Positions 2,156-29,765 of a stretch of 64,000 nucleotides of DNA are shown here, in pieces. Below the pieces are notes generated by a model, which saw only the letters and a program-made list of their open reading frames with translations, searched no databases and was not told where the DNA came from. Both the position numbers and the translations under genes were made by a program. Position 1 is the stretch's first letter. Every line of letters begins with the position of its first letter. The stretch covers positions 140,101-204,100 of IMG/VR virus record IMGVR_UViG_3300013116_000108; one strand, given 5' to 3'.

Positions 2156-2533
2156 TTAGATAGCAACTATTGTCATTTTATTAACAGCAGAGTCATCCGA
2201 AATTGACCATGTGTATCTTACACCGTCAAAATCAGTACAAGATCTGTTGTACATTTTTTTGATATTTTTATAAGTTGTAGTACCGTTAATTACAGCAGAA
2301 ATAGACATTTCGTTAGCGCCTAAGTTCTCAGATGCTTTATCAACTAGTGTACATACACCTTCGTTACCTGAATCATCTTTAGCATCATCAACTAAAAATT
2401 TGTTTGATGATCTTTGTGATTTAATCATTCCTTGTACTGAAGCCGAGTTTGAACCTACTTTACAGTTAACATTAATGTTACCTGAATCTGTATCAACTTC
2501 ACCAAAGTGTTTTTTATTTACTGGACGTCCCAT
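2156..2533 (-). CDS. Conserved hypothetical late protein (125 aa)
   Basis: Strong Shine-Dalgarno AGGAG upstream; preceded by a late promoter and a structured leader. Confidence 0.7.
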   Translation of the reverse strand: MGRPVNKKHFGEVDTDSGNINVNCKVGSNSASVQGMIKSQRSSNKFLVDDAKDDSGNEGVCTLVDKASENLGANEMSISAVINGTTTYKNIKKMYNRSCTDFDGVRYTWSISDDSAVNKMTIVAI

Positions 2534-2617
2534 TTTTTTCTCCTAAGTTACGTTTTAAGTAATACGCGGTGGGTCAATTCCGCATAAGTCCACACCATTT
2601 GTGGCACGATTTTTGAC
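2534..2617 (-). ncRNA. Candidate structured 5' leader (cis-regulatory RNA)
   Basis: From the predicted +1 (2617): GUCAA, stem CCACA/UGUGG, stem AUGCGG/CCGCGU with a loop containing UUGAC (complementary to the 5' GUCAA), a weak UUAC/GUAA stem, then the SD. Confidence 0.45.
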
Positions 2618-2622
2618 AGTAG

Positions 2623-2629
2623 TATTTAT
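2623..2629 (-). promoter_or_regulatory. T4-type late promoter (ATAAATA)
   Basis: Matches the TATAAATA-like late consensus; gp55 homolog is present in the window. Confidence 0.6.
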
Positions 2630-3262
2630 CTAAATAATATACTTTTTAACAACCTCATAAACACATTTATGACCGTAAGCATTAAGTTTTCTATCAGGGG
2701 CACAATCTTTATAAAAAGAACCAACATTAGTTAAATCAGGATGTTGCTCCATTACCCAACCCCAAAATTGATTTATATCACCTCTGTTTATATATGGTAT
2801 AACTATTAATTTATCTGTAGATTTTCTATAACTTTCTTGTATAAAAATTAAACACTTTTTATTATGAGCCCAACTATTTAATATATCATATGTAAAATTA
2901 GATTGCCATTCGCAATACTCGTGTGTCATATGAGGTCCTAAATTTTCTGTAATGTTATGTAAAGGTCCTGTTACGTCCCAGTTTAATGATCTGTTTGACG
3001 AGGGCATTACACTAACAAAAAAATCATTATAACCATTATCTATATTACTTTTTAAAATTGTACTAGCATAATACAACGGACTAATGCCTATTGTGTGTTC
3101 TTTTGATGGCTTATGTAATGTTATAACATTTTCAAAATCTTTACCTAACAACTCCCACCAGTGTTCTCCAGATTTTACATTAAAGCCATTATATGGCCCA
3201 GGACTTGCTATAAGTTGATCGCCGTATGTTATTAAATTTTTGCCCATAATATTATTTAACAT
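2630..3262 (-). CDS. Degenerate SGNH/GDSL-like protein (210 aa)
   Basis: N-terminal LITYGD (block I-like) and C-terminal KLNAYGH (block V-like), but the catalytic Ser and His appear to be replaced. Confidence 0.35.
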   Translation of the reverse strand: MLNNIMGKNLITYGDQLIASPGPYNGFNVKSGEHWWELLGKDFENVITLHKPSKEHTIGISPLYYASTILKSNIDNGYNDFFVSVMPSSNRSLNWDVTGPLHNITENLGPHMTHEYCEWQSNFTYDILNSWAHNKKCLIFIQESYRKSTDKLIVIPYINRGDINQFWGWVMEQHPDLTNVGSFYKDCAPDRKLNAYGHKCVYEVVKKYII

Positions 3263-3301
3263 AATATATTCTCAAAAAAATGTCAACCAAAAAATAGTCA
3301 T

Positions 3302-3331
3302 AAAAAAAGGTAAACACGAAGTTTACCTTTT
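3302..3331 (-). terminator. Intrinsic terminator closing the stand-alone ncRNA
   Basis: AAAAGGTAAAC-TTCGT-GTTTACCTTTT followed by TTT on the minus strand. Confidence 0.85.
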
Positions 3332-3596
3332 CTCTTTTACTTTACCGTGAGTAAAAACGTGTGTATTAAGGCACAACCCTAAACAAGCAAAATAGGGAGG
3401 ACTCGGTTATACCTCCAACCCCTTGACCGGATACCATTCCTAATCCAGGGAGCCTAGTTCCGCTCGGTAGAGCGATGTGATTCTTAGTTTCTCAACTTTG
3501 AACCTGGGTACCACCCCTAACTAGCCTAGTTCGACGCTCTGGTAAACGCCTCTTCCTAGCACTATAAACAAAAGTTAATTATTCTTTTGTTGCTAT
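3302..3596 (-). ncRNA. Stand-alone structured ncRNA, ~295 nt, family not identified
   Basis: ORF-free and GC-richer than its flanks. Has its own sigma70 promoter and terminator, a duplicated GAACUAGGCU decamer, two UACC-loop hairpins and two UGGUA-containing hairpins. Confidence 0.7.
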
Positions 3597-3602
3597 GTTA
3601 CT

Positions 3603-3631
3603 AATATAGCAAACATTTACTATATTGTCAA
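3603..3631 (-). promoter_or_regulatory. Sigma70-type (early) promoter
   Basis: TTGACA (3631-3626), 17 nt spacer, TATATT (3608-3603), with an A-tract UP-like element upstream. Confidence 0.8.
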
Positions 3632-3669
3632 CCTTTTTTTTAATTTTTTTGGAAAAAGATATTTTGGCC

Positions 3670-3697
3670 AAAAAGAAAGGCGCCTAAGCGCCTTTCT
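3670..3697 (-). terminator. Intrinsic terminator after the major capsid gene
   Basis: AGAAAGGCGC-TTAG-GCGCCTTTCT followed by TTTT on the minus strand. Confidence 0.9.
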
Positions 3698-3721
3698 AAA
3701 TACTTCTAAAGTTCTTTACTA

Positions 3722-4894
3722 TTAAGCAAACGAGATGTTTGACATAGCAATTTCACCCAAGTAGTCACCAGCATTACCAAGTGATGATGCTGTGTTAGTT
3801 AACTCAACATAACCGTATCTAGTCATGAAGCCAACTACTGGCTCTAAAGTATCAGGATCAAGTACAACACCTGAAGACATTAGAGGAACGTATGGGCAAT
3901 AGAACGCCGCCGCGTCTGCTTCGCTTGAACCTTTGTATCCAACTAGTACTGCTGAGTCATCAGCCGCATAAGTGTCTACGTAGATTTTCATAGCGCCATT
4001 CAATGTACCTACAAACTTGTTGTTTGTTGGTGCTTCAAATGAACCTTCAGTTGTTCTTGCGAACGCTGAAGTAGAAGCAGATTGAAGTACTGTAAGAGCT
4101 TGTGGAGAAACCACAGCCCAGTTACCAGCACCACGTCTAGTTCTTTGAGCAATTTTATTTGCTGTTCTGTTGATTAATACAGCCAGAGCCGCATGTTCGT
4201 CACCAACGTAAGTAGCAGTACCACTTACAGCCGTTTGGTTGTAAGTTTCTTCAGTAGCCGCTAGTGATCTTAAAGAAGTAAGAACTTCTTGGTCGATCTC
4301 AGCAGTAATTTCTTGAGCCAAAGCGGCCATAATTTCTGCTTCAACGTCGATTCCGTGCATTGATTGAGCGTCTTGAGCCGATTCAAATGTCCAACGAGCT
4401 GATAATTTACGAGTTTTCGCTTCAACTGGTTGCTTTAAGATTTGAATGTTCAATTTCTTACCTGGTGCACCTTCTAAAGTAGCCGTAGAAGCACCTGCTC
4501 CTGGGTTACTATCGTTACCTGAGTAAGATTCTGCAATCTTGAACGGAGATAATGCTTCGTCACCAGCAGTGATGTTTGTAGCACCACCTGTAGTAGTATC
4601 AGCATATCTAACTCTTAGTGTATGAATTTGACCTACTGGGCCTTGCATAGGCTGAACACCAACGATTTCGTTAGCGATAACAGTAGGCATAACACGTCTG
4701 ATTACTGGTAGTATCACACGGTTTAATGTAGCAACGTTACCGGCAGATGTCGCGCCAGCAGTTGCCGCCTCTTTTAAGTATGAGCGGGTATTCTCTAAAA
4801 CAACGCTCATAGTTGATTTAGAATTTCCATCTAAACCTTCCATAAGTGCCGATTTAGTATCATCCCAACGGCTTTCAATTAATGTATCTGACAT
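3722..4894 (-). CDS. g23: Major capsid protein (T4 gp23-like)
   Basis: Motifs LPVIRRVMPTVIANEIVGVQPMQGP, AKTRKLSARWTFESAQDA, LAQEITAEIDQE, FYCPYVPL and GFMTRYG. Confidence 0.97.
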   Translation of the reverse strand: MSDTLIESRWDDTKSALMEGLDGNSKSTMSVVLENTRSYLKEAATAGATSAGNVATLNRVILPVIRRVMPTVIANEIVGVQPMQGPVGQIHTLRVRYADTTTGGATNITAGDEALSPFKIAESYSGNDSNPGAGASTATLEGAPGKKLNIQILKQPVEAKTRKLSARWTFESAQDAQSMHGIDVEAEIMAALAQEITAEIDQEVLTSLRSLAATEETYNQTAVSGTATYVGDEHAALAVLINRTANKIAQRTRRGAGNWAVVSPQALTVLQSASTSAFARTTEGSFEAPTNNKFVGTLNGAMKIYVDTYAADDSAVLVGYKGSSEADAAAFYCPYVPLMSSGVVLDPDTLEPVVGFMTRYGYVELTNTASSLGNAGDYLGEIAMSNISFA

Positions 4895-4913
4895 TTTTAT
4901 GTCTCCCTTATAA

Positions 4914-6005
4914 TTACATTCCAGCCAATTTCTGAAGAAGAACTATGTTGCCTTCATCAGCGTCTTGGCTTTGTTTAGTTTTATTTCCAGTAACTTCTCT
5001 ACGAGTTTCCGCTAAAACTTCTTTCTTTGGTGCCTCGTCTTTTAGTACTGCTGGCAAATATTTGTCGTATGCTGATTGTATCTTATCAGTTGCGACACTT
5101 TCGAGTAAACTTTGCATTACTTCAGCCTGCTTGTTTGCTAACGGCTTCATTAATTCATTGAGTTTTTCTTTTCTTTCGATACCCTCGTTAATTTGCTCAA
5201 TTCTTGCCTTTTGAGCTTCAACTTCTTTAGCAGATGCTTCTGATTTCTCAGTTGCTTCTTTTAATTGCTTGTCTTTGTCAACAATTACTGCTTCTAAATC
5301 TTTCATTTCTTGATTTTCATTCAAGTAACTAGTAGAATATTCAGCGGCAAATGTTTCAAACAATTTGCGACCAAAGTTGTTTTCACGAGCCTGTTTGATA
5401 TCTTCTTTAAGTTGAGTTAGTTCGTCTCTTAAAGTACCTGTTACGGCTTCCTTAACAAGTTTGCTTGATTTCTCTACAAATTTCTTCTTGAGTGTATCAA
5501 GTTGATCTTTTGCTTCAGCAACTAATCTTACTTTAGTTTCCACAACGTCTTTCTTATCTTTGTGGAATTCAGTAATTTCAGATGCTAAGTTTTCAATTAC
5601 AAACTTTTCAAGTTTTTCCATTGTAGCAGACTGTGACTTACGATCTGATCTAAGTTCACTAATTTCTTCTGCTAATTTCTTAACTAGGAAATTATTAAAC
5701 TTTTCAGCAGATTCAGTCATTTTCGCATTAAGTTTAACACGATCTTCTGCTAATGCTTTCTTTTCAGCAACTACTTGCTCAATTTCAGCACTTAGGTTTT
5801 CCGTAACCATCTTATCGAGAGCCTCAACCATAGTTTGTTTATCATGCTCATAACGTCCGGCGAATTCCTCGCGGAGATCCTGAGTAACTTCTTCACGGAT
5901 TTCTTTTAACTTGGTATCCCAAGCCTCAGTAATCTGTGCTCTAGTTTCCTCATTCACTAAATCGCTATCAAGCAACGGTTTGATGACTTCTAACATATTG
6001 GTCAA
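4914..6005 (-). CDS. g22: Prohead core/scaffold protein (gp22-like)
   Basis: Coiled-coil, Glu/Lys-rich; FGRKLFETF motif; lies between the protease and capsid genes. Confidence 0.85.
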   Translation of the reverse strand: MTNMLEVIKPLLDSDLVNEETRAQITEAWDTKLKEIREEVTQDLREEFAGRYEHDKQTMVEALDKMVTENLSAEIEQVVAEKKALAEDRVKLNAKMTESAEKFNNFLVKKLAEEISELRSDRKSQSATMEKLEKFVIENLASEITEFHKDKKDVVETKVRLVAEAKDQLDTLKKKFVEKSSKLVKEAVTGTLRDELTQLKEDIKQARENNFGRKLFETFAAEYSTSYLNENQEMKDLEAVIVDKDKQLKEATEKSEASAKEVEAQKARIEQINEGIERKEKLNELMKPLANKQAEVMQSLLESVATDKIQSAYDKYLPAVLKDEAPKKEVLAETRREVTGNKTKQSQDADEGNIVLLQKLAGM

Positions 6006-6634
6006 CTCCTAACTTTTAGTTCTTGGATGAGCTTTAATACTTCATCCTTTAAATACCTCTGTACCTTATTATCATGCTGTGCTTCTTTGGCAATTTCTAA
6101 AACTTTATGACCATGTGTCATGTTCAAAAGTCCTTCGTATATTGCCGTAGGGTAGGCATTAGGTGCAGAAGGTTGTGCTACGACATCTATCGTAACTATC
6201 TCGAATTCGCTCACCTGTCCGGTGGCTTCATTGACATTGCCGCTTCCGCGACTGCTTACTCCCAATTTTACACCATTGTCCACCATAGTTTTCACTAGTT
6301 GTCCCATTGGTGTAGGGAGAATCTTTAATTTACCAAATCCGTTTGGACCATCCATCCACATATTTTCTACCATGTGGCATACCCTGTCTAGGTTAACTTG
6401 TAACCCTTCTGGGTGGTCTACTTCTCCAAGGACGCTATTGCCTGTAGAGATTTGGTCATTTAATGTTTTTACTGCCGAAGCAATTTCGTTCACAGGATAT
6501 ACACGTTGGTTAGCATTTTTTACCCCACCTTGTATACAAATTCCTTTCATGTACAAGTCCTTGCCTTCGTTAGCAGATTCTATTACTAGATTTGCTTGAT
6601 CGAACGTTAAGTTTTCTTGTAGTAAAGGTTTCAT
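6002..6634 (-). CDS. g21: Prohead protease (gp21-like)
   Basis: Motifs KNANQRVYP, LGEVDHP, GVKLGVSSRGSG and DVVAQPSAPNAY. Confidence 0.95.
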   Translation of the reverse strand: MKPLLQENLTFDQANLVIESANEGKDLYMKGICIQGGVKNANQRVYPVNEIASAVKTLNDQISTGNSVLGEVDHPEGLQVNLDRVCHMVENMWMDGPNGFGKLKILPTPMGQLVKTMVDNGVKLGVSSRGSGNVNEATGQVSEFEIVTIDVVAQPSAPNAYPTAIYEGLLNMTHGHKVLEIAKEAQHDNKVQRYLKDEVLKLIQELKVRS

Positions 6635-7924: not shown

Positions 7925-9598
7925 TTAAATTGAAATATCCTCTTCTGCTCCTGCTTCAGGTTCTGCTTCTGTGTCTCCACCTTCGCCACCCGCATCAGCA
8001 TCGCCTAGGTCATCACCACCTAAACTATCCAAATCGCCACTCAATCCGCCCGGAGTAATTCCGGCACTTCTAAGTGATTTACTTCCTATAGCAGATTCTG
8101 AGTCACCTTGTTCCTCACGCCATAGTCTGTCATTCTCTGCCATTTCTTCTTCAGTAAGACCTAAAAATCTTTCTAAAGCAAATCTTTTAGAGACATATTT
8201 TAAACCTTCCATCTGTGTAAAGTTGCTAATACGACTAGCATCAATATCACTTTGTCTATAACTAGCAAAGTTTTGAGGTTCATTAAACTCAATATCAAAT
8301 ATTGAATTATCAATGTTAACACCTCTCCAACGTAACCACAATTTAAATTCAGCGTCCATTGTACTTGCTACTAAACTTTGTAGTCGCATACAATACTGAT
8401 TAAATCTATGTTCTTGTATTAGTGCTACACCTACTTTGCCATCTGCTACTGTGTTAGTAGCGTCATCGCCTGATGTGGGCAAATATGTTGCTGGTATTCT
8501 TAAACCTCTGTACAGTTTATTAGTAAAGTATTTTAAGTCTGAAATTTCACCTAGGTTTTCACCACCTGGTAATGTTTCAACTTTAGAACCTCTACCTTCT
8601 GCTGTTTGAGGAAAGAAATAATCTTCATTTGTTGATAATGGATTGTAAGTAGCATCCATCATACTTTGTCCACCACCTGTTTGTGTTGGAATACGTCTTT
8701 GGTGTATTTCGTTTTTAACTCTTTCAACATAACCCATTGCCATGTGTGTTGGCATGTTACCTACGTCAATGTAAAATACTCTACGCTCAGGTGCTCTTTG
8801 AACCCTGTATATAATAATAGCGTCTTCTAATAATTCTTTTTGTTTGAATACTTTAAAAATATTTTCTAATACACTTGTGCCGAATGGCCAGTTATTATCT
8901 AACCCTTCAGTTAAACTTAAATGTACAACGTTTTCAGCATCTATAGAATTTTCAGTTACTTCAGTTTGTCTGCCTTGGTACTGTCCAGCCTGGTTATGTC
9001 CTGTTGTACTAGAACTAGGTGACATGTTTGCTGTTTCTGTGTGTGCTGGTGCTGTAATTGTTAAGTTTTCAAAATTAGGAGCAATATCTTTTAATACATA
9101 AACTTCAGGTGCTTTACCTTTTGCTTCGTTAACAACAACCTTCACTACGTTTTGTGGCTCAACCCAAAACCATTCAAATGTTTCTGGGTCTCTAATAAAT
9201 GTTTGATCTCCGTACTTGAGTACGTTACGAAACATTTTAAAAATTCTTTTATTAAAATCGTTTAAACTAGTCCAATTTTTAAGTTGTTCACTTAAAACTT
9301 TTACTTCTGTTTCTGTTGGATTTTCTTTAAATTTAAATGTAAATGGTGTTCCGTTTTCAGGAGACTTCATTGTACAAAATTCTGCTAGAATATCAATTGC
9401 TGTATTAACTTCTGAATCCATATCCATAGATTCATATTGATGATATCTTTCAATTCTATTCGGGTGTCCTACATATACTTCTGGTAATTGGCTTTGGTAA
9501 TTTTTAAAACCTAAATCGGCTTTAGAGTATCCACCAGCATTGCTAAGAGGACTTAGGGCGCCTGTGTCTACTGTTTTAAAATATTTTTTCCAACTCAT
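7925..9598 (-). CDS. g20: Portal vertex protein (gp20-like)
   Basis: Motifs LLEDAIIIYRVQRAPERRVFYIDVGNMP, EDYFFPQTAEGRGSKVETLPGGENLGEI and KLYRGLRIP. Confidence 0.97.
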   Translation of the reverse strand: MSWKKYFKTVDTGALSPLSNAGGYSKADLGFKNYQSQLPEVYVGHPNRIERYHQYESMDMDSEVNTAIDILAEFCTMKSPENGTPFTFKFKENPTETEVKVLSEQLKNWTSLNDFNKRIFKMFRNVLKYGDQTFIRDPETFEWFWVEPQNVVKVVVNEAKGKAPEVYVLKDIAPNFENLTITAPAHTETANMSPSSSTTGHNQAGQYQGRQTEVTENSIDAENVVHLSLTEGLDNNWPFGTSVLENIFKVFKQKELLEDAIIIYRVQRAPERRVFYIDVGNMPTHMAMGYVERVKNEIHQRRIPTQTGGGQSMMDATYNPLSTNEDYFFPQTAEGRGSKVETLPGGENLGEISDLKYFTNKLYRGLRIPATYLPTSGDDATNTVADGKVGVALIQEHRFNQYCMRLQSLVASTMDAEFKLWLRWRGVNIDNSIFDIEFNEPQNFASYRQSDIDASRISNFTQMEGLKYVSKRFALERFLGLTEEEMAENDRLWREEQGDSESAIGSKSLRSAGITPGGLSGDLDSLGGDDLGDADAGGEGGDTEAEPEAGAEEDISI

Positions 9599-29693: not shown

Positions 29694-29717
29694 ATCACCC
29701 TCCTTATGTTAAGTTAG

Positions 29718-29765
29718 GTGCGTTCCTTCGGCGTATGCCTACTTCCGGCCTAATGGCTGAACGGT
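29718..29765 (-). ncRNA. Glutamine-I (glnA motif) riboswitch
   Basis: ACCGUUC-A-GCC AUUA GGC-C-GGAAGUA-GGC AUAC GCC-GAAG-GAACG-CAC: P1 CGUUC/GAACG, P2, P3 and the GGAAGUA/GAAG E-loop of glnA RNAs. Confidence 0.85.

What the first reader, a model, noticed from the sequence alone, without database searches (positions are those of the whole stretch)
3302..3631. Free-standing ~295 nt ncRNA with two tandem kissing-loop modules next to the capsid gene
This is a complete transcription unit with no ORF: TTGACA-17-TATATT promoter and intrinsic terminator, insulated from g23 by another terminator. The minus-strand RNA has two repeated modules. Module 1: hairpin GGCGUU-UACCAG-AGCGUC (3550-3533), GAACUAGGCU (3532-3523), hairpin GGG-GUGGUA-CCC (3517-3506). 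Module 2: CGCUC-UACC-GAGCG (3474-3461), the identical GAACUAGGCU (3460-3451), CUGGAU-UAGGAAUGGU-AUCCGG (3448-3427). In each module the UACC loop is complementary to UGGUA. UAGGAAGAGG (3558-3549) can close the whole fold with CCUCCCUA (3400-3393). A duplicated, sequence-conserved pseudoknot suggests tandem aptamers, a ribozyme or a protein-sponge/decoy RNA made early in infection. Function is inference.
Basis: partly seen in the sequence, partly recalled or inferred. Interest (0 to 1): 0.8.

Follow-up and report, generated by a model that had tools for sequence, protein, structure and literature searches.

The report
manA-class phage RNA, own transcription unit
The RNA next to the capsid gene is real, but it belongs to the known manA RNA family of marine phages, a family recently shown to self-assemble into RNA cages, so it is not a new class.

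Summary
The element is not new. It matches Rfam manA (RF01745) over the full model at 3589-3386(-): 54.4 bits, E 3.5e-13, 0.8 bit under the curated cut-off. Direct homologues pass that cut-off: L104 59.3, pelagiphage Mosig 64.0, L190 79.9 bits.

I collected more than 170 homologous copies from marine viral contigs.
- The nested manA fold covaries strongly in them.
- The loop pairs that do covary are B:C (GGUA 3512-3509 with UACC 3469-3466) and D:E (UGGU 3436-3433 with ACCG 3407-3404).

These correspond, on my own helix numbering, to the L5-L7' and L8-L9' kissing loops. A 2026 cryo-EM preprint shows those loops joining manA protomers into pentamers, decamers and a 60-mer cage.

The "free-standing unit" reading holds up. 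99 of 104 copies have a sigma70-like promoter and 64 of 98 have a terminator-like hairpin. The next gene usually has its own promoter-like site. Two metatranscriptomes hold contigs over the RNA but none over its flanks.

The RNA and the ORF downstream form a 1.03-kb cassette that is missing from a close relative. The biological role is unknown.

The parts
3670..3696 (-). Terminator-like hairpin GAAAGGCGC-UUAG-GCGCCUUUC plus U run, ending the capsid (g23-like) gene unit. With the promoter below, it forms a terminator/early-promoter composite of the PeSL type.
   Evidence: Sequence read. The capsid ORF 3722-4894(-) matches the major head protein family phrog_138, E 6e-100.
3603..3631 (-). Sigma70-type promoter: TTGACA, 17 nt, TATATT, with TG upstream of the -10. 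The predicted start is near A3596, 2 nt before the RNA's terminal helix.
   Evidence: 11/12 match. The same promoter geometry (-35 at least 4/6) is found in 99 of 104 homologous copies. The -10 box is aligned in A1.
3386..3594 (-). The manA-class RNA fold (209 nt), with my own helix labels. Terminal helix AGC 3594-3592 / GCU 3388-3386. 5' hairpin 3589-3584 / 3574-3569. P1 AUAG 3565-3562 / CUAU 3395-3392. P2 CUAG 3559-3556 / CUAG 3529-3526. P3 (hairpin A) 3550-3533. P4 CUAGUU 3524-3519 / AACUAG 3459-3454. P5 (hairpin B) 3517-3506. P6 3504-3479, with GNRA loop GAGA at 3493-3490. P7 (hairpin C) 3475-3460. P8 (hairpin D) 3450-3419. P9 (hairpin E) 3416-3396.
   Evidence: cmscan manA 3589-3386, 54.4 bits, E 3.5e-13, model positions 1-192. 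nhmmer with the subfamily profile hits 3594-3386, E 8e-59. In the alignment, 87.3% of cells are paired and the covariation score is 0.315 against 0.122 shuffled, 0/500. RNAalifold finds 36 of 48 pairs with compensatory changes.
3539..3544 (-). Loop of hairpin A (my L3), UACCAG. The ACCA core is invariant in the 79 aligned copies. Its partner is unresolved.
   Evidence: It does not change (ACCA, or CCCA in 3 copies) when loop B changes.
3509..3514 (-). Loop of hairpin B (my L5), GUGGUA. GGUA 3512-3509 pairs with UACC of hairpin C.
   Evidence: No viral contig has core positions 1, 3 or 4 changed. 52 contigs have position 2 changed, and loop C carries the matching change in them. Permutation z = -9.9.
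3466..3469 (-). Loop of hairpin C (my L7), UACC. It is the partner of loop B.
   Evidence: The observed states are G-C (GUGGUA/UACC), G.U (GUGGUA/..ACUA), A-U (GUAGUA/..ACUA) and U-A (GUUGUA/GACA).
3433..3442 (-). Loop of hairpin D (my L8), UAGGAAUGGU. UGGU 3436-3433 pairs with ACCG of hairpin E.
   Evidence: Cognate D:E complementarity gives z = -8.0, 0/2000.
3401..3411 (-). Loop of hairpin E (my L9), UAUAACCGAGU. ACCG 3407-3404 is the partner of loop D.
   Evidence: The variants AUGGUAU/AUACCAU, AUGGAAU/AUUCCAU, AGGAU/AUCCU and UGGU/ACCA all keep complementarity.
3298..3385 (-). 3' tail with the intrinsic-terminator-like hairpin at 3331-3305 and the U run at 3304-3302. This spacer (55 nt to the hairpin) is longer than the 6-15 nt seen in most relatives.
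   Evidence: Only L104 shares this tail.
3258..3286 (-). Second sigma70-like promoter-like site (TTGACA-17-TATGTT), serving the next ORF.
2630..3262 (-). ORF of 210 aa with unknown function. It travels with the RNA in the cassette.
   Evidence: No Pfam or PHROG match. Only unnamed metagenomic homologues.
2634..3660 (-). 1.03-kb cassette (RNA unit plus ORF unit). It is present here and in L104 but absent from the close relative L122.
   Evidence: blastn. In L122, window 3661 is joined directly to window 2633.

Best explanation
The element is a manA-class RNA (Rfam RF01745), from a subfamily that is very common in marine T4-like phage contigs.

Expression (inferred). It is transcribed on its own from a sigma70-type, presumably early, promoter. 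The start is about 2 nt before the RNA's terminal helix, and an intrinsic terminator ends the unit. That gives a non-coding RNA of roughly 250-300 nt with a 209-nt folded core.

Structure (shown by covariation). The core is one multi-helix fold, not two modules. It has two selected loop-loop pairings: hairpin B with C (GGUA/UACC) and hairpin D with E (UGGU/ACCG).

Mechanism (inferred by homology). In the manA RNAs solved by cryo-EM, the loops I equate with these (L5-L7' and L8-L9') pair between molecules. They join protomers into pentamers that close into decamers or a 60-mer cage. The most likely working of this RNA is therefore self-assembly into a homo-oligomeric RNA particle in the infected cell, rather than ligand sensing in a 5' UTR. 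What the particle does is unknown.

Genomic setting. The RNA unit and the following ORF sit between terminator/promoter composites and behave as a gain/loss cassette.
For: Family membership:
- The Rfam match covers the full model at E 3.5e-13.
- Homologues score 57.5-79.9 bits, above the 55.2 cut-off. One is L104, about 90% identical to the window.
- The nested fold covaries.
- The P6 loop is GNRA (GAAA or GAGA) in 67 of 79 copies.
- One cluster of relatives sits next to a mannose-6-phosphate isomerase/cytidylyltransferase gene, as in the original description (PMC2864571).

Loop-loop pairs:
- Loop B position 2 is G, A or U. Loop C carries C or U, U, and A respectively, while loop A does not change to match.
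- Cognate against permuted duplex energies: B:C z = -9.9 and D:E z = -8.0, both 0/2000.
- Cryo-EM shows manA oligomers held by intermolecular L5-L7', L8-L9' or L3-L8' kissing loops and an L6 GNRA-receptor contact (bioRxiv 10.64898/2026.07.01.735769).

Own transcription unit:
- 99 of 104 copies have a promoter.
- 64 of 98 have a hairpin plus T run, whose sequence varies between copies.
- That hairpin stays intact beside the manA fold in the minimum-free-energy structure of 45 of 47 unique copies.
- 42 of 76 unique copies are followed by a late-promoter-like ATAAATA, against 1 in shuffles.
- In two metatranscriptomes a contig over the RNA has word depth 495 and 78. Capsid-gene contigs have about 214-320 and 19-36. 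Depth is zero at 3618-3704 and 2400-3269.

Cassette.
Against: - The window copy itself is 0.8 bit under Rfam's gathering score. Some subfamily members score as low as 45 bits.
- Oligomerisation has not been shown for this subfamily or in any cell. The cryo-EM assemblies were made in vitro at about 3 mg/mL RNA, with 10 mM Mg2+ and a 50 C incubation.
- My mapping of L3-L9 onto hairpins A-E is inferred from the order of the helices and the GNRA loop. The preprint's figures are not held, so I could not check it.
- Covariation cannot tell intra- from intermolecular pairing.
- In part of the subfamily loop C has weak complementarity to loop B. Examples are UCCC in 5 of 112 sequences and AACCC in 10 of 112.
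- Mosig-like copies have no terminator and end 17-26 nt before an ORF start (rubrerythrin, peroxiredoxin), as a cis-regulator would.
- The metatranscriptome data are unstranded contigs that may come from relatives. Their adapter-joined ends (3345, 3359) lie upstream of the predicted terminator.
- The permutation tests ignore relatedness among the sequences.
Confidence: 0.6

Rival explanations
1. It is a riboswitch or other cis-regulator, as manA was first classed. The manA fold would be an aptamer and the hairpin at 3331-3305 its expression platform. A ligand would decide whether transcription continues into the 210-aa ORF.
For: - Rfam and Weinberg et al. 2010 class manA as a cis-regulatory riboswitch candidate.
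- A terminator directly after a structured domain is what a transcriptional riboswitch looks like.
- Mosig-like copies abut an ORF with a Shine-Dalgarno-like AGGA.
- The RNA and the ORF are gained and lost together.
Against: - The terminator sequences differ freely between copies while the RNA's 3' end is conserved, so no conserved anti-terminator is visible.
- The terminator and the manA fold form together in 45 of 47 minimum-free-energy structures.
- Downstream genes are unrelated to one another: isomerase, gp32, rubrerythrin, peroxiredoxin, TonB receptor and unknowns.
- In 50 of 76 unique copies a promoter-like site of some kind follows the RNA. In the window it is TTGACA-17-TATGTT at 3286-3258.
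- None of the papers found here names a ligand.
- The laid metatranscriptome contigs show no depth on the ORF.
Confidence: 0.2
2. It is a trans-acting RNA that works as a monomer. It would act as a protein sponge or decoy, or as a base-pairing small RNA, with the invariant ACCA loop of hairpin A and the other loops as binding sites. This is.
For: - It has its own promoter and terminator.
- It appears abundant in metatranscriptome contigs.
- Loop A is invariant, yet its conservation is not explained by the two covarying loop pairs.
Against: - No partner is known.
- The loops that vary do so in step with another loop of the same RNA. This points to RNA-RNA self-contacts rather than to an external target.
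- Cryo-EM already shows self-assembly for this family.
Confidence: 0.15
3. It is a chance structure in an intergenic spacer, or an unrecognised small protein gene.
For: The region is AT-rich and intergenic. A single-sequence fold alone is only z = -2.5.
Against: - More than 170 homologous copies show compensatory changes in every helix.
- There is no ORF of 30 aa or more inside the RNA on its strand.
- The Rfam match is full-length.
Confidence: 0.01

Closest known systems
manA RNA motif (Rfam RF01745; Weinberg et al. 2010, PMC2864571)
   Same: - The covariance-model match covers the full length.
- The helices come in the same order.
- The loops GUGGU(R) and ACC and the GNRA loop are conserved.
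- The habitat is the same: marine T4-like phages and marine metagenomes.
- Some copies lie next to mannose-6-phosphate isomerase genes.
- Copies cluster with other phage RNA motifs such as the glutamine riboswitch.
   Different: - The window copy is 0.8 bit under the curated cut-off.
- The outer helix is AU-rich (AUAG/CUAU) where the consensus has GGGAG/CUCCC.
- Hairpin A carries an invariant ACCA loop that is not in the Rfam consensus.
- Loop C is variable in this subfamily.
- Most copies are flanked by their own promoter and terminator rather than lying in an obvious 5' UTR.
manA RNAs solved by cryo-EM (manA_A0F1 60-mer cage; manA_pho34_A767, manA_67AA and manA_pho_A28C decamers; bioRxiv 10.64898/2026.07.01.735769)
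   Same: Same Rfam family. The two loop pairs that covary here (B:C and D:E) correspond, on my numbering, to the L5-L7' and L8-L9' kissing loops that build the A0F1 pentamer. A GNRA loop sits at the place of L6.
   Different: Assembly of this subfamily is untested. The role of the invariant loop A (perhaps L3-L8', as in pho34) is open.
PeSL composite terminator / early-promoter motifs of T4-like phages (PMC2839356, PMC4122927)
   Same: A stem-loop terminator immediately followed by a sigma70-type early promoter occurs twice here: 3696-3670 with 3631-3603, and 3331-3305 with 3286-3258. An indel relative to a close relative lies at such a site.
   Different: PeSLs were described around protein-coding ORFs in hyperplastic regions. 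Here one of the units carried is an RNA gene. I did not test sequence similarity between the two composites, nor recombination at them.
Large phage-associated RNAs that form RNA-only multimers
   Same: Structured non-coding RNAs, often in phages or prophages, that self-assemble through loop-loop contacts into closed particles. Their biological role is unknown.
   Different: They are several-fold longer and unrelated in sequence and fold.

Membership tests
manA RNA (RF01745) | Significant covariance-model match over the whole model | tested here: met
   3589-3386(-), model positions 1-192 of 192, 54.4 bits, E 3.5e-13.
manA RNA (RF01745) | Score at or above Rfam's curated gathering cut-off of 55.2 bits. 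This is an operational threshold, not a structural feature. | tested here: inconclusive
   The window copy scores 54.4 bits and is absent from the gathering-mode scan. Direct homologues pass: L104 (about 90% identical region) 59.3, Mosig 64.0, L190 79.9. Among 14 subfamily copies, 8 pass, with a range of 45.3-79.9 bits.
manA RNA (RF01745) | The nested helices of the consensus are kept by compensatory changes | tested here: met
   87.3% of cells are paired. 40 pairs have changes on both sides. The covariation score is 0.315 against 0.122 shuffled (0/500), and slid partners give at most 0.138. RNAalifold finds compensation in 36 of 48 pairs.
manA RNA (RF01745) | Conserved loops: GUGGU(R) on the short hairpin and ACC(A) on the hairpin after the GNRA stem | tested here: met
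   GUGGUA at 3514-3509 and UACC at 3469-3466, aligned to consensus GUGGUG and uaACCA. GAGA lies at 3493-3490. The loop is GNRA (GAAA or GAGA) in 67 of 79 relatives.
manA RNA (RF01745) | Loop-loop pairing: the 'pseudoknot?' of the 2010 figure (my guess that it is this pair), and L5-L7' and L8-L9' in cryo-EM | tested here: met
   B:C and D:E cognate complementarity give z = -9.9 and -8.0. The pair types seen are G-C, G.U, A-U and U-A. Whether the pairing is within or between molecules cannot be told from sequence.
manA RNA (RF01745) | Occurrence in marine phages and metagenomes, next to auxiliary metabolic genes | tested here: met
   The window is held at full length by marine/seawater metagenome runs. 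Relatives lie next to mannose-6-phosphate isomerase, rubrerythrin, peroxiredoxin, gp32 and TonB-receptor genes.
manA RNA (RF01745) | Homo-oligomerisation into pentamer-based particles | not testable with these tools
   Complex prediction refuses RNA-only jobs. This needs native gel, SEC or cryo-EM.
Riboswitch (aptamer plus expression platform) | An expression platform whose alternative pairing overlaps the aptamer | tested here: not met
   Terminator sequences are unrelated between copies, and the hairpin starts 6-15 nt (55 nt here) after the closed terminal helix. The terminator is intact alongside the fold in 45 of 47 minimum-free-energy structures, and only 4 show any cross-pairing. Minimum-free-energy folding is a weak test.
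Riboswitch (aptamer plus expression platform) | A consistent class of regulated genes, and a known ligand | tested here: not met
   The downstream genes fall into many unrelated clusters. None of the papers found names a ligand. Ligand binding itself cannot be tested here.
PeSL-type mobile regulatory cassette | A terminator stem-loop directly followed by an early promoter, flanking units that differ between close relatives | tested here: met
   L122 (85-88% nt identity in the flanks) lacks window 3660-2634, while L104 has it. Recombination at the composites is inferred, not shown.

The most novel reading that the evidence does not exclude
This very common marine-phage subfamily of manA RNAs may not be a 5'-UTR regulator at all. 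It may be an independent, early-expressed RNA gene whose product assembles in infected cells into pentamer-based RNA particles or cages through the covarying B:C and D:E kissing loops. The invariant ACCA loop of hairpin A would then give a subfamily-specific third contact or a cargo or protein binding site. That would make it a natural phage-encoded RNA nanocompartment, expressed at about capsid-mRNA level in the sea.
Probability: 0.3. Interest if true: 0.75.

Novelty: new member of a known kind. Interest (0 to 1): 0.33.

Why it matters
As a discovery the finding is ordinary. It is one more copy of an RNA family described in 2010, and a scan at Rfam's default threshold just misses it. The family itself has become interesting because short manA RNAs were reported in 2026 to build a 60-subunit icosahedral cage in vitro, with no known biology behind it.

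The comparative data gathered here bear on that open question in three ways:
1. Natural sequences covary at what I take to be the loops that form the cryo-EM interfaces. Those contacts are therefore under selection and are not only an in-vitro effect.
2. In this subfamily the RNA mostly has its own promoter and terminator, which argues against the long-standing 'cis-regulatory' label.
3. Contigs over the RNA are present in marine metatranscriptomes at word depths like those of the capsid gene.

There is also a cultured system with a homologue, Pelagibacter phage Mosig, in which the function could be tested.

Tried and rejected
- Rfam at gathering threshold found nothing in the region. Only the E-value mode showed manA.
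- ARAGORN found no tRNA or tmRNA.
- megablast of the surroundings against isolated phages gave only a short capsid match to Atu_ph07.
- blastn of the L190 manA copy against phages gave no match, so I could not examine classical cyanophage copies.
- 80 capsid-gene relatives were searched for the RNA. Only L190 has a copy, so the position next to the capsid gene is not a conserved linkage.
- My first column-based count also seemed to reject B:C. That was an alignment-register artefact, corrected by register-free duplex scoring and by the loop-B variants.
- A:D and B:E pairings were considered. Loop A is invariant, so A:D is uninformative (424/2000). B:E is worse than permuted.
- The 210-aa ORF has no Pfam or PHROG match and no named homologue.
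- A strict sigma70 promoter after the terminator was found in only 8 of 46 copies. The usual follower is a late-type ATAAATA motif instead.
- I did not build a covariance model of my own. nhmmer was enough to locate the copies.

Full report
**What is there.**
- A TTGACA-17-TATATT promoter lies at 3631-3603, with TG upstream.
- A hairpin with a U run lies at 3331-3305.
- A second hairpin with a U run lies at 3696-3670, right after the capsid stop.
- Four hairpins, a twice-occurring 10-mer and the complementary stretches are at the stated coordinates.
- No ORF of 30 aa or more lies inside the RNA on its strand.

The upstream genes are a T4-type head module: portal at 7925-9598 (PF07230), prohead protease at 6002-6634, and major head protein at 3722-4894. 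The capsid protein is closest (about 69% aa) to those of jumbo myoviruses such as PA5oct. The window is held at full length by marine metagenome runs.

**What it is.** At Rfam's gathering threshold nothing is reported in the region. In E-value mode the stretch 3589-3386(-) matches manA RNA (RF01745) over model positions 1-192. The score is 54.4 bits against a cut-off of 55.2, with E 3.5e-13.

A blastn search found one isolate with a homologue, Pelagibacter phage Mosig EXVC030M (72% identity over 96% of the query, unannotated). That copy scores 64.0 bits.

Fourteen of these copies score 45.3-79.9 bits to manA, and eight are above the cut-off. One is L104, which is about 90% identical to the window across 5.8 kb.

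One cluster of relatives lies beside a mannose-6-phosphate isomerase/cytidylyltransferase gene, the association that named the motif (PMC2864571). The element is therefore a slightly sub-threshold member of a family described in 2010.

**The fold.** I aligned 78 distinct full-length copies with the window (A1).
- RNAalifold found 48 pairs, 36 of them with compensatory changes.
- I projected the manA architecture onto the alignment. That comprises the terminal helix, the 5' hairpin, P1, P2, hairpin A, P4, hairpins B and C around a GNRA hairpin, and hairpins D and E.
- On that structure 87.3% of cells are paired. The covariation score is 0.315 against 0.122 in shuffles (0/500) and at most 0.138 with slid partners.
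Its 3' strand is used instead by hairpin E (GGAGG/CCUCC) and by P1 (AUAG/CUAU), both of which covary.
- The duplicated GAACUAGGCU consists of the 3' strands of P2 and P4 plus conserved purines. The exact repeat is peculiar to this lineage.

**The kissing loops.** Five loops carry ACC-type or GGU-type sequences, so several pairings are possible on paper.

Loop B was fixed by my first search pattern. I therefore scanned for copies with each core position of loop B changed.
- Three of the four scans found nothing.
- One scan found 52 contigs with the second position changed.
- Where loop B is GUUGUA (29 distinct sequences), loop C is GACA.
- Where loop B is GUAGUA, loop C ends in ACUA.
- Where loop B is GUGGUA, loop C is mostly UACC or ..ACUA.
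- The pair thus runs through G-C, G.U, A-U and U-A, while loop A stays ACCA or CCCA throughout.

Loops D and E likewise change together: AUGGUAU/AUACCAU, AUGGAAU/AUUCCAU, AGGAU/AUCCU and UGGU/ACCA.

| Loop pair | Cognate against permuted duplex energy, 112 sequences |
|---|---|
| B:C | z = -9.9, 0/2000 |
| D:E | z = -8.0, 0/2000 |

These tests ignore relatedness among the sequences, but several distinct pair types are involved.

**Link to structure.** A 2026 preprint (bioRxiv 10.64898/2026.07.01.735769) reports cryo-EM structures of manA RNAs.
- The RNAs form pentamer-based decamers and a 60-subunit T=1 cage.
- The contacts are intermolecular kissing loops L5-L7' and L8-L9'. In another variant they are an L6 GNRA-receptor contact with L5-L7' and L3-L8'.

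I counted helices from the outer stem and placed the only GNRA loop at L6. On that numbering hairpins A-E are L3, L5, L7, L8 and L9. The two covarying pairs here are then exactly the A0F1 interfaces. This mapping is my inference, because the figures are not held. Sequence data cannot say whether the pairs form within or between molecules, and the tool for complexes refuses RNA-only jobs.

**Free-standing or cis-regulatory?**
- Among full-length copies, 99 of 104 have a -35 (at least 4/6, mostly TTGACW) 16-18 nt from a TATATT-like -10. The -10 lies about 8 nt before the terminal helix.
- 64 of 98 have a GC hairpin plus T run, starting 6-15 nt after the RNA. In the window and L104 it starts at 54-55 nt.
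- The hairpin sequences are unrelated between copies.
- In 45 of 47 unique copies the hairpin forms intact alongside the manA fold in the minimum-free-energy structure.
- The next gene usually has its own promoter-like site. 42 of 76 unique copies show ATAAATA within 150 nt, against 1 in shuffles. This resembles the T4 late-promoter consensus TATAAATA, which I cite from my own knowledge. It is often followed by the freshwater-2 motif.
- In the window the follower is a second TTGACA-17-TATGTT site.
- The downstream genes are unrelated to each other.
- Mosig-like copies are the exception: they have no terminator, and an ORF starts 17-26 nt downstream.

**Expression.** I laid Logan contigs of four metatranscriptomes on 2400-5000.
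- In X6 and X7, contigs cover about 3345/3359-3581.
- One contig over the RNA has word depth 495 in X6 and 78 in X7. Capsid-gene contigs have about 214-320 and 19-36.
- Depth is zero at 3618-3704 and over 2400-3269.
- Adapter sequence is joined at 3345 (X6) and 3359 (X7).

The RNA contig carries the compensated hairpin-A variant GGCUCU/AGGGUC, so it comes from a relative. Contigs have no strand, and DNA carry-over cannot be excluded. The data point to a discrete, abundant RNA but do not prove it.

**Genomic behaviour.** L122 (85-88% nt identity in the flanks, 97% capsid protein identity) joins window 3661 directly to 2633. The window therefore has an extra 1027 bp holding the RNA unit and the 210-aa ORF unit. 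L104 has both. L190, a more distant capsid relative, has a glutamine riboswitch, manA (79.9 bits) and freshwater-2 in a row after its capsid gene.

The terminator-plus-early-promoter composites that bound these units resemble the PeSL motifs. PeSLs mediate modular shuffling in T4-like phages (PMC2839356, PMC4122927).

**Verdict.**
It is wrong on novelty, on loop partners, on the closing helix and on the tandem-module idea.
- Membership of the manA family is very likely (about 0.95).
- Being a separate transcript is likely (about 0.75).
- Self-assembly in vivo is plausible but untested (about 0.4).
- The function remains unknown.

Noticed in passing
window 2531-2605 (-), with GATAAATAC at 2631-2623: A freshwater-2 RNA (RF02980, 51.3 bits) lies just after a late-promoter-like ATAAATA. 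It runs into the start of a 125-aa ORF (2156-2533, MGRPVNKK...). The same late motif, freshwater-2 and MGRPxNK gene follow manA in many marine contigs. The gene cluster has 31 members, and its representative matches the E1_FCCH domain. So freshwater-2 looks like the leader of a late phage gene.
   Followed up: partly
window 29717-29765 (-); also L003, L009, L027, L038, L077, L190: A glutamine riboswitch aptamer (58.2 bits) is in the window. In many related contigs the glutamine riboswitch, manA and freshwater-2 lie within about 1 kb of each other, forming a recurring island of structured RNAs.
   Followed up: partly
window 2634-3660, compared with L122:5234: A 1027-bp indel (RNA unit plus 210-aa ORF unit) relative to a close relative. 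It is bounded by terminator/promoter composites of the PeSL type.
   Followed up: yes
window 3722-4894 (-); loci L141, L157, L162, L170: The capsid protein is only 390 aa. It is closest to jumbo-phage capsids (PA5oct, Atu_ph07, Rak2-like; about 65-70% aa). Several IMG/VR relatives sit on contigs of 160-374 kb, so this marine lineage may include jumbo phages.
   Followed up: no
window 3353-3376 (-): A weak 4-bp hairpin (UGUG/CACA) followed by U5 lies between the manA fold and the main terminator. It is close to the adapter-joined contig ends at 3345 and 3359, so it may be an earlier 3' end or a processing site.
   Followed up: no
A1 columns 71-77 (window 3544-3539): The ACCA core of hairpin A's loop is invariant in the 79 aligned copies although it was not part of the search pattern. 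It is absent from the Rfam manA consensus. Its partner (loop D of another protomer, a protein or a ligand) is unknown.
   Followed up: partly
L001 (Mosig MT647606 108165-108381); L035, L095, L098, L114: The pelagiphage-type copies lack the terminator and sit 17-26 nt before rubrerythrin or peroxiredoxin genes (oxidative-stress proteins). This is a different, UTR-like arrangement of the same RNA.
   Followed up: partly
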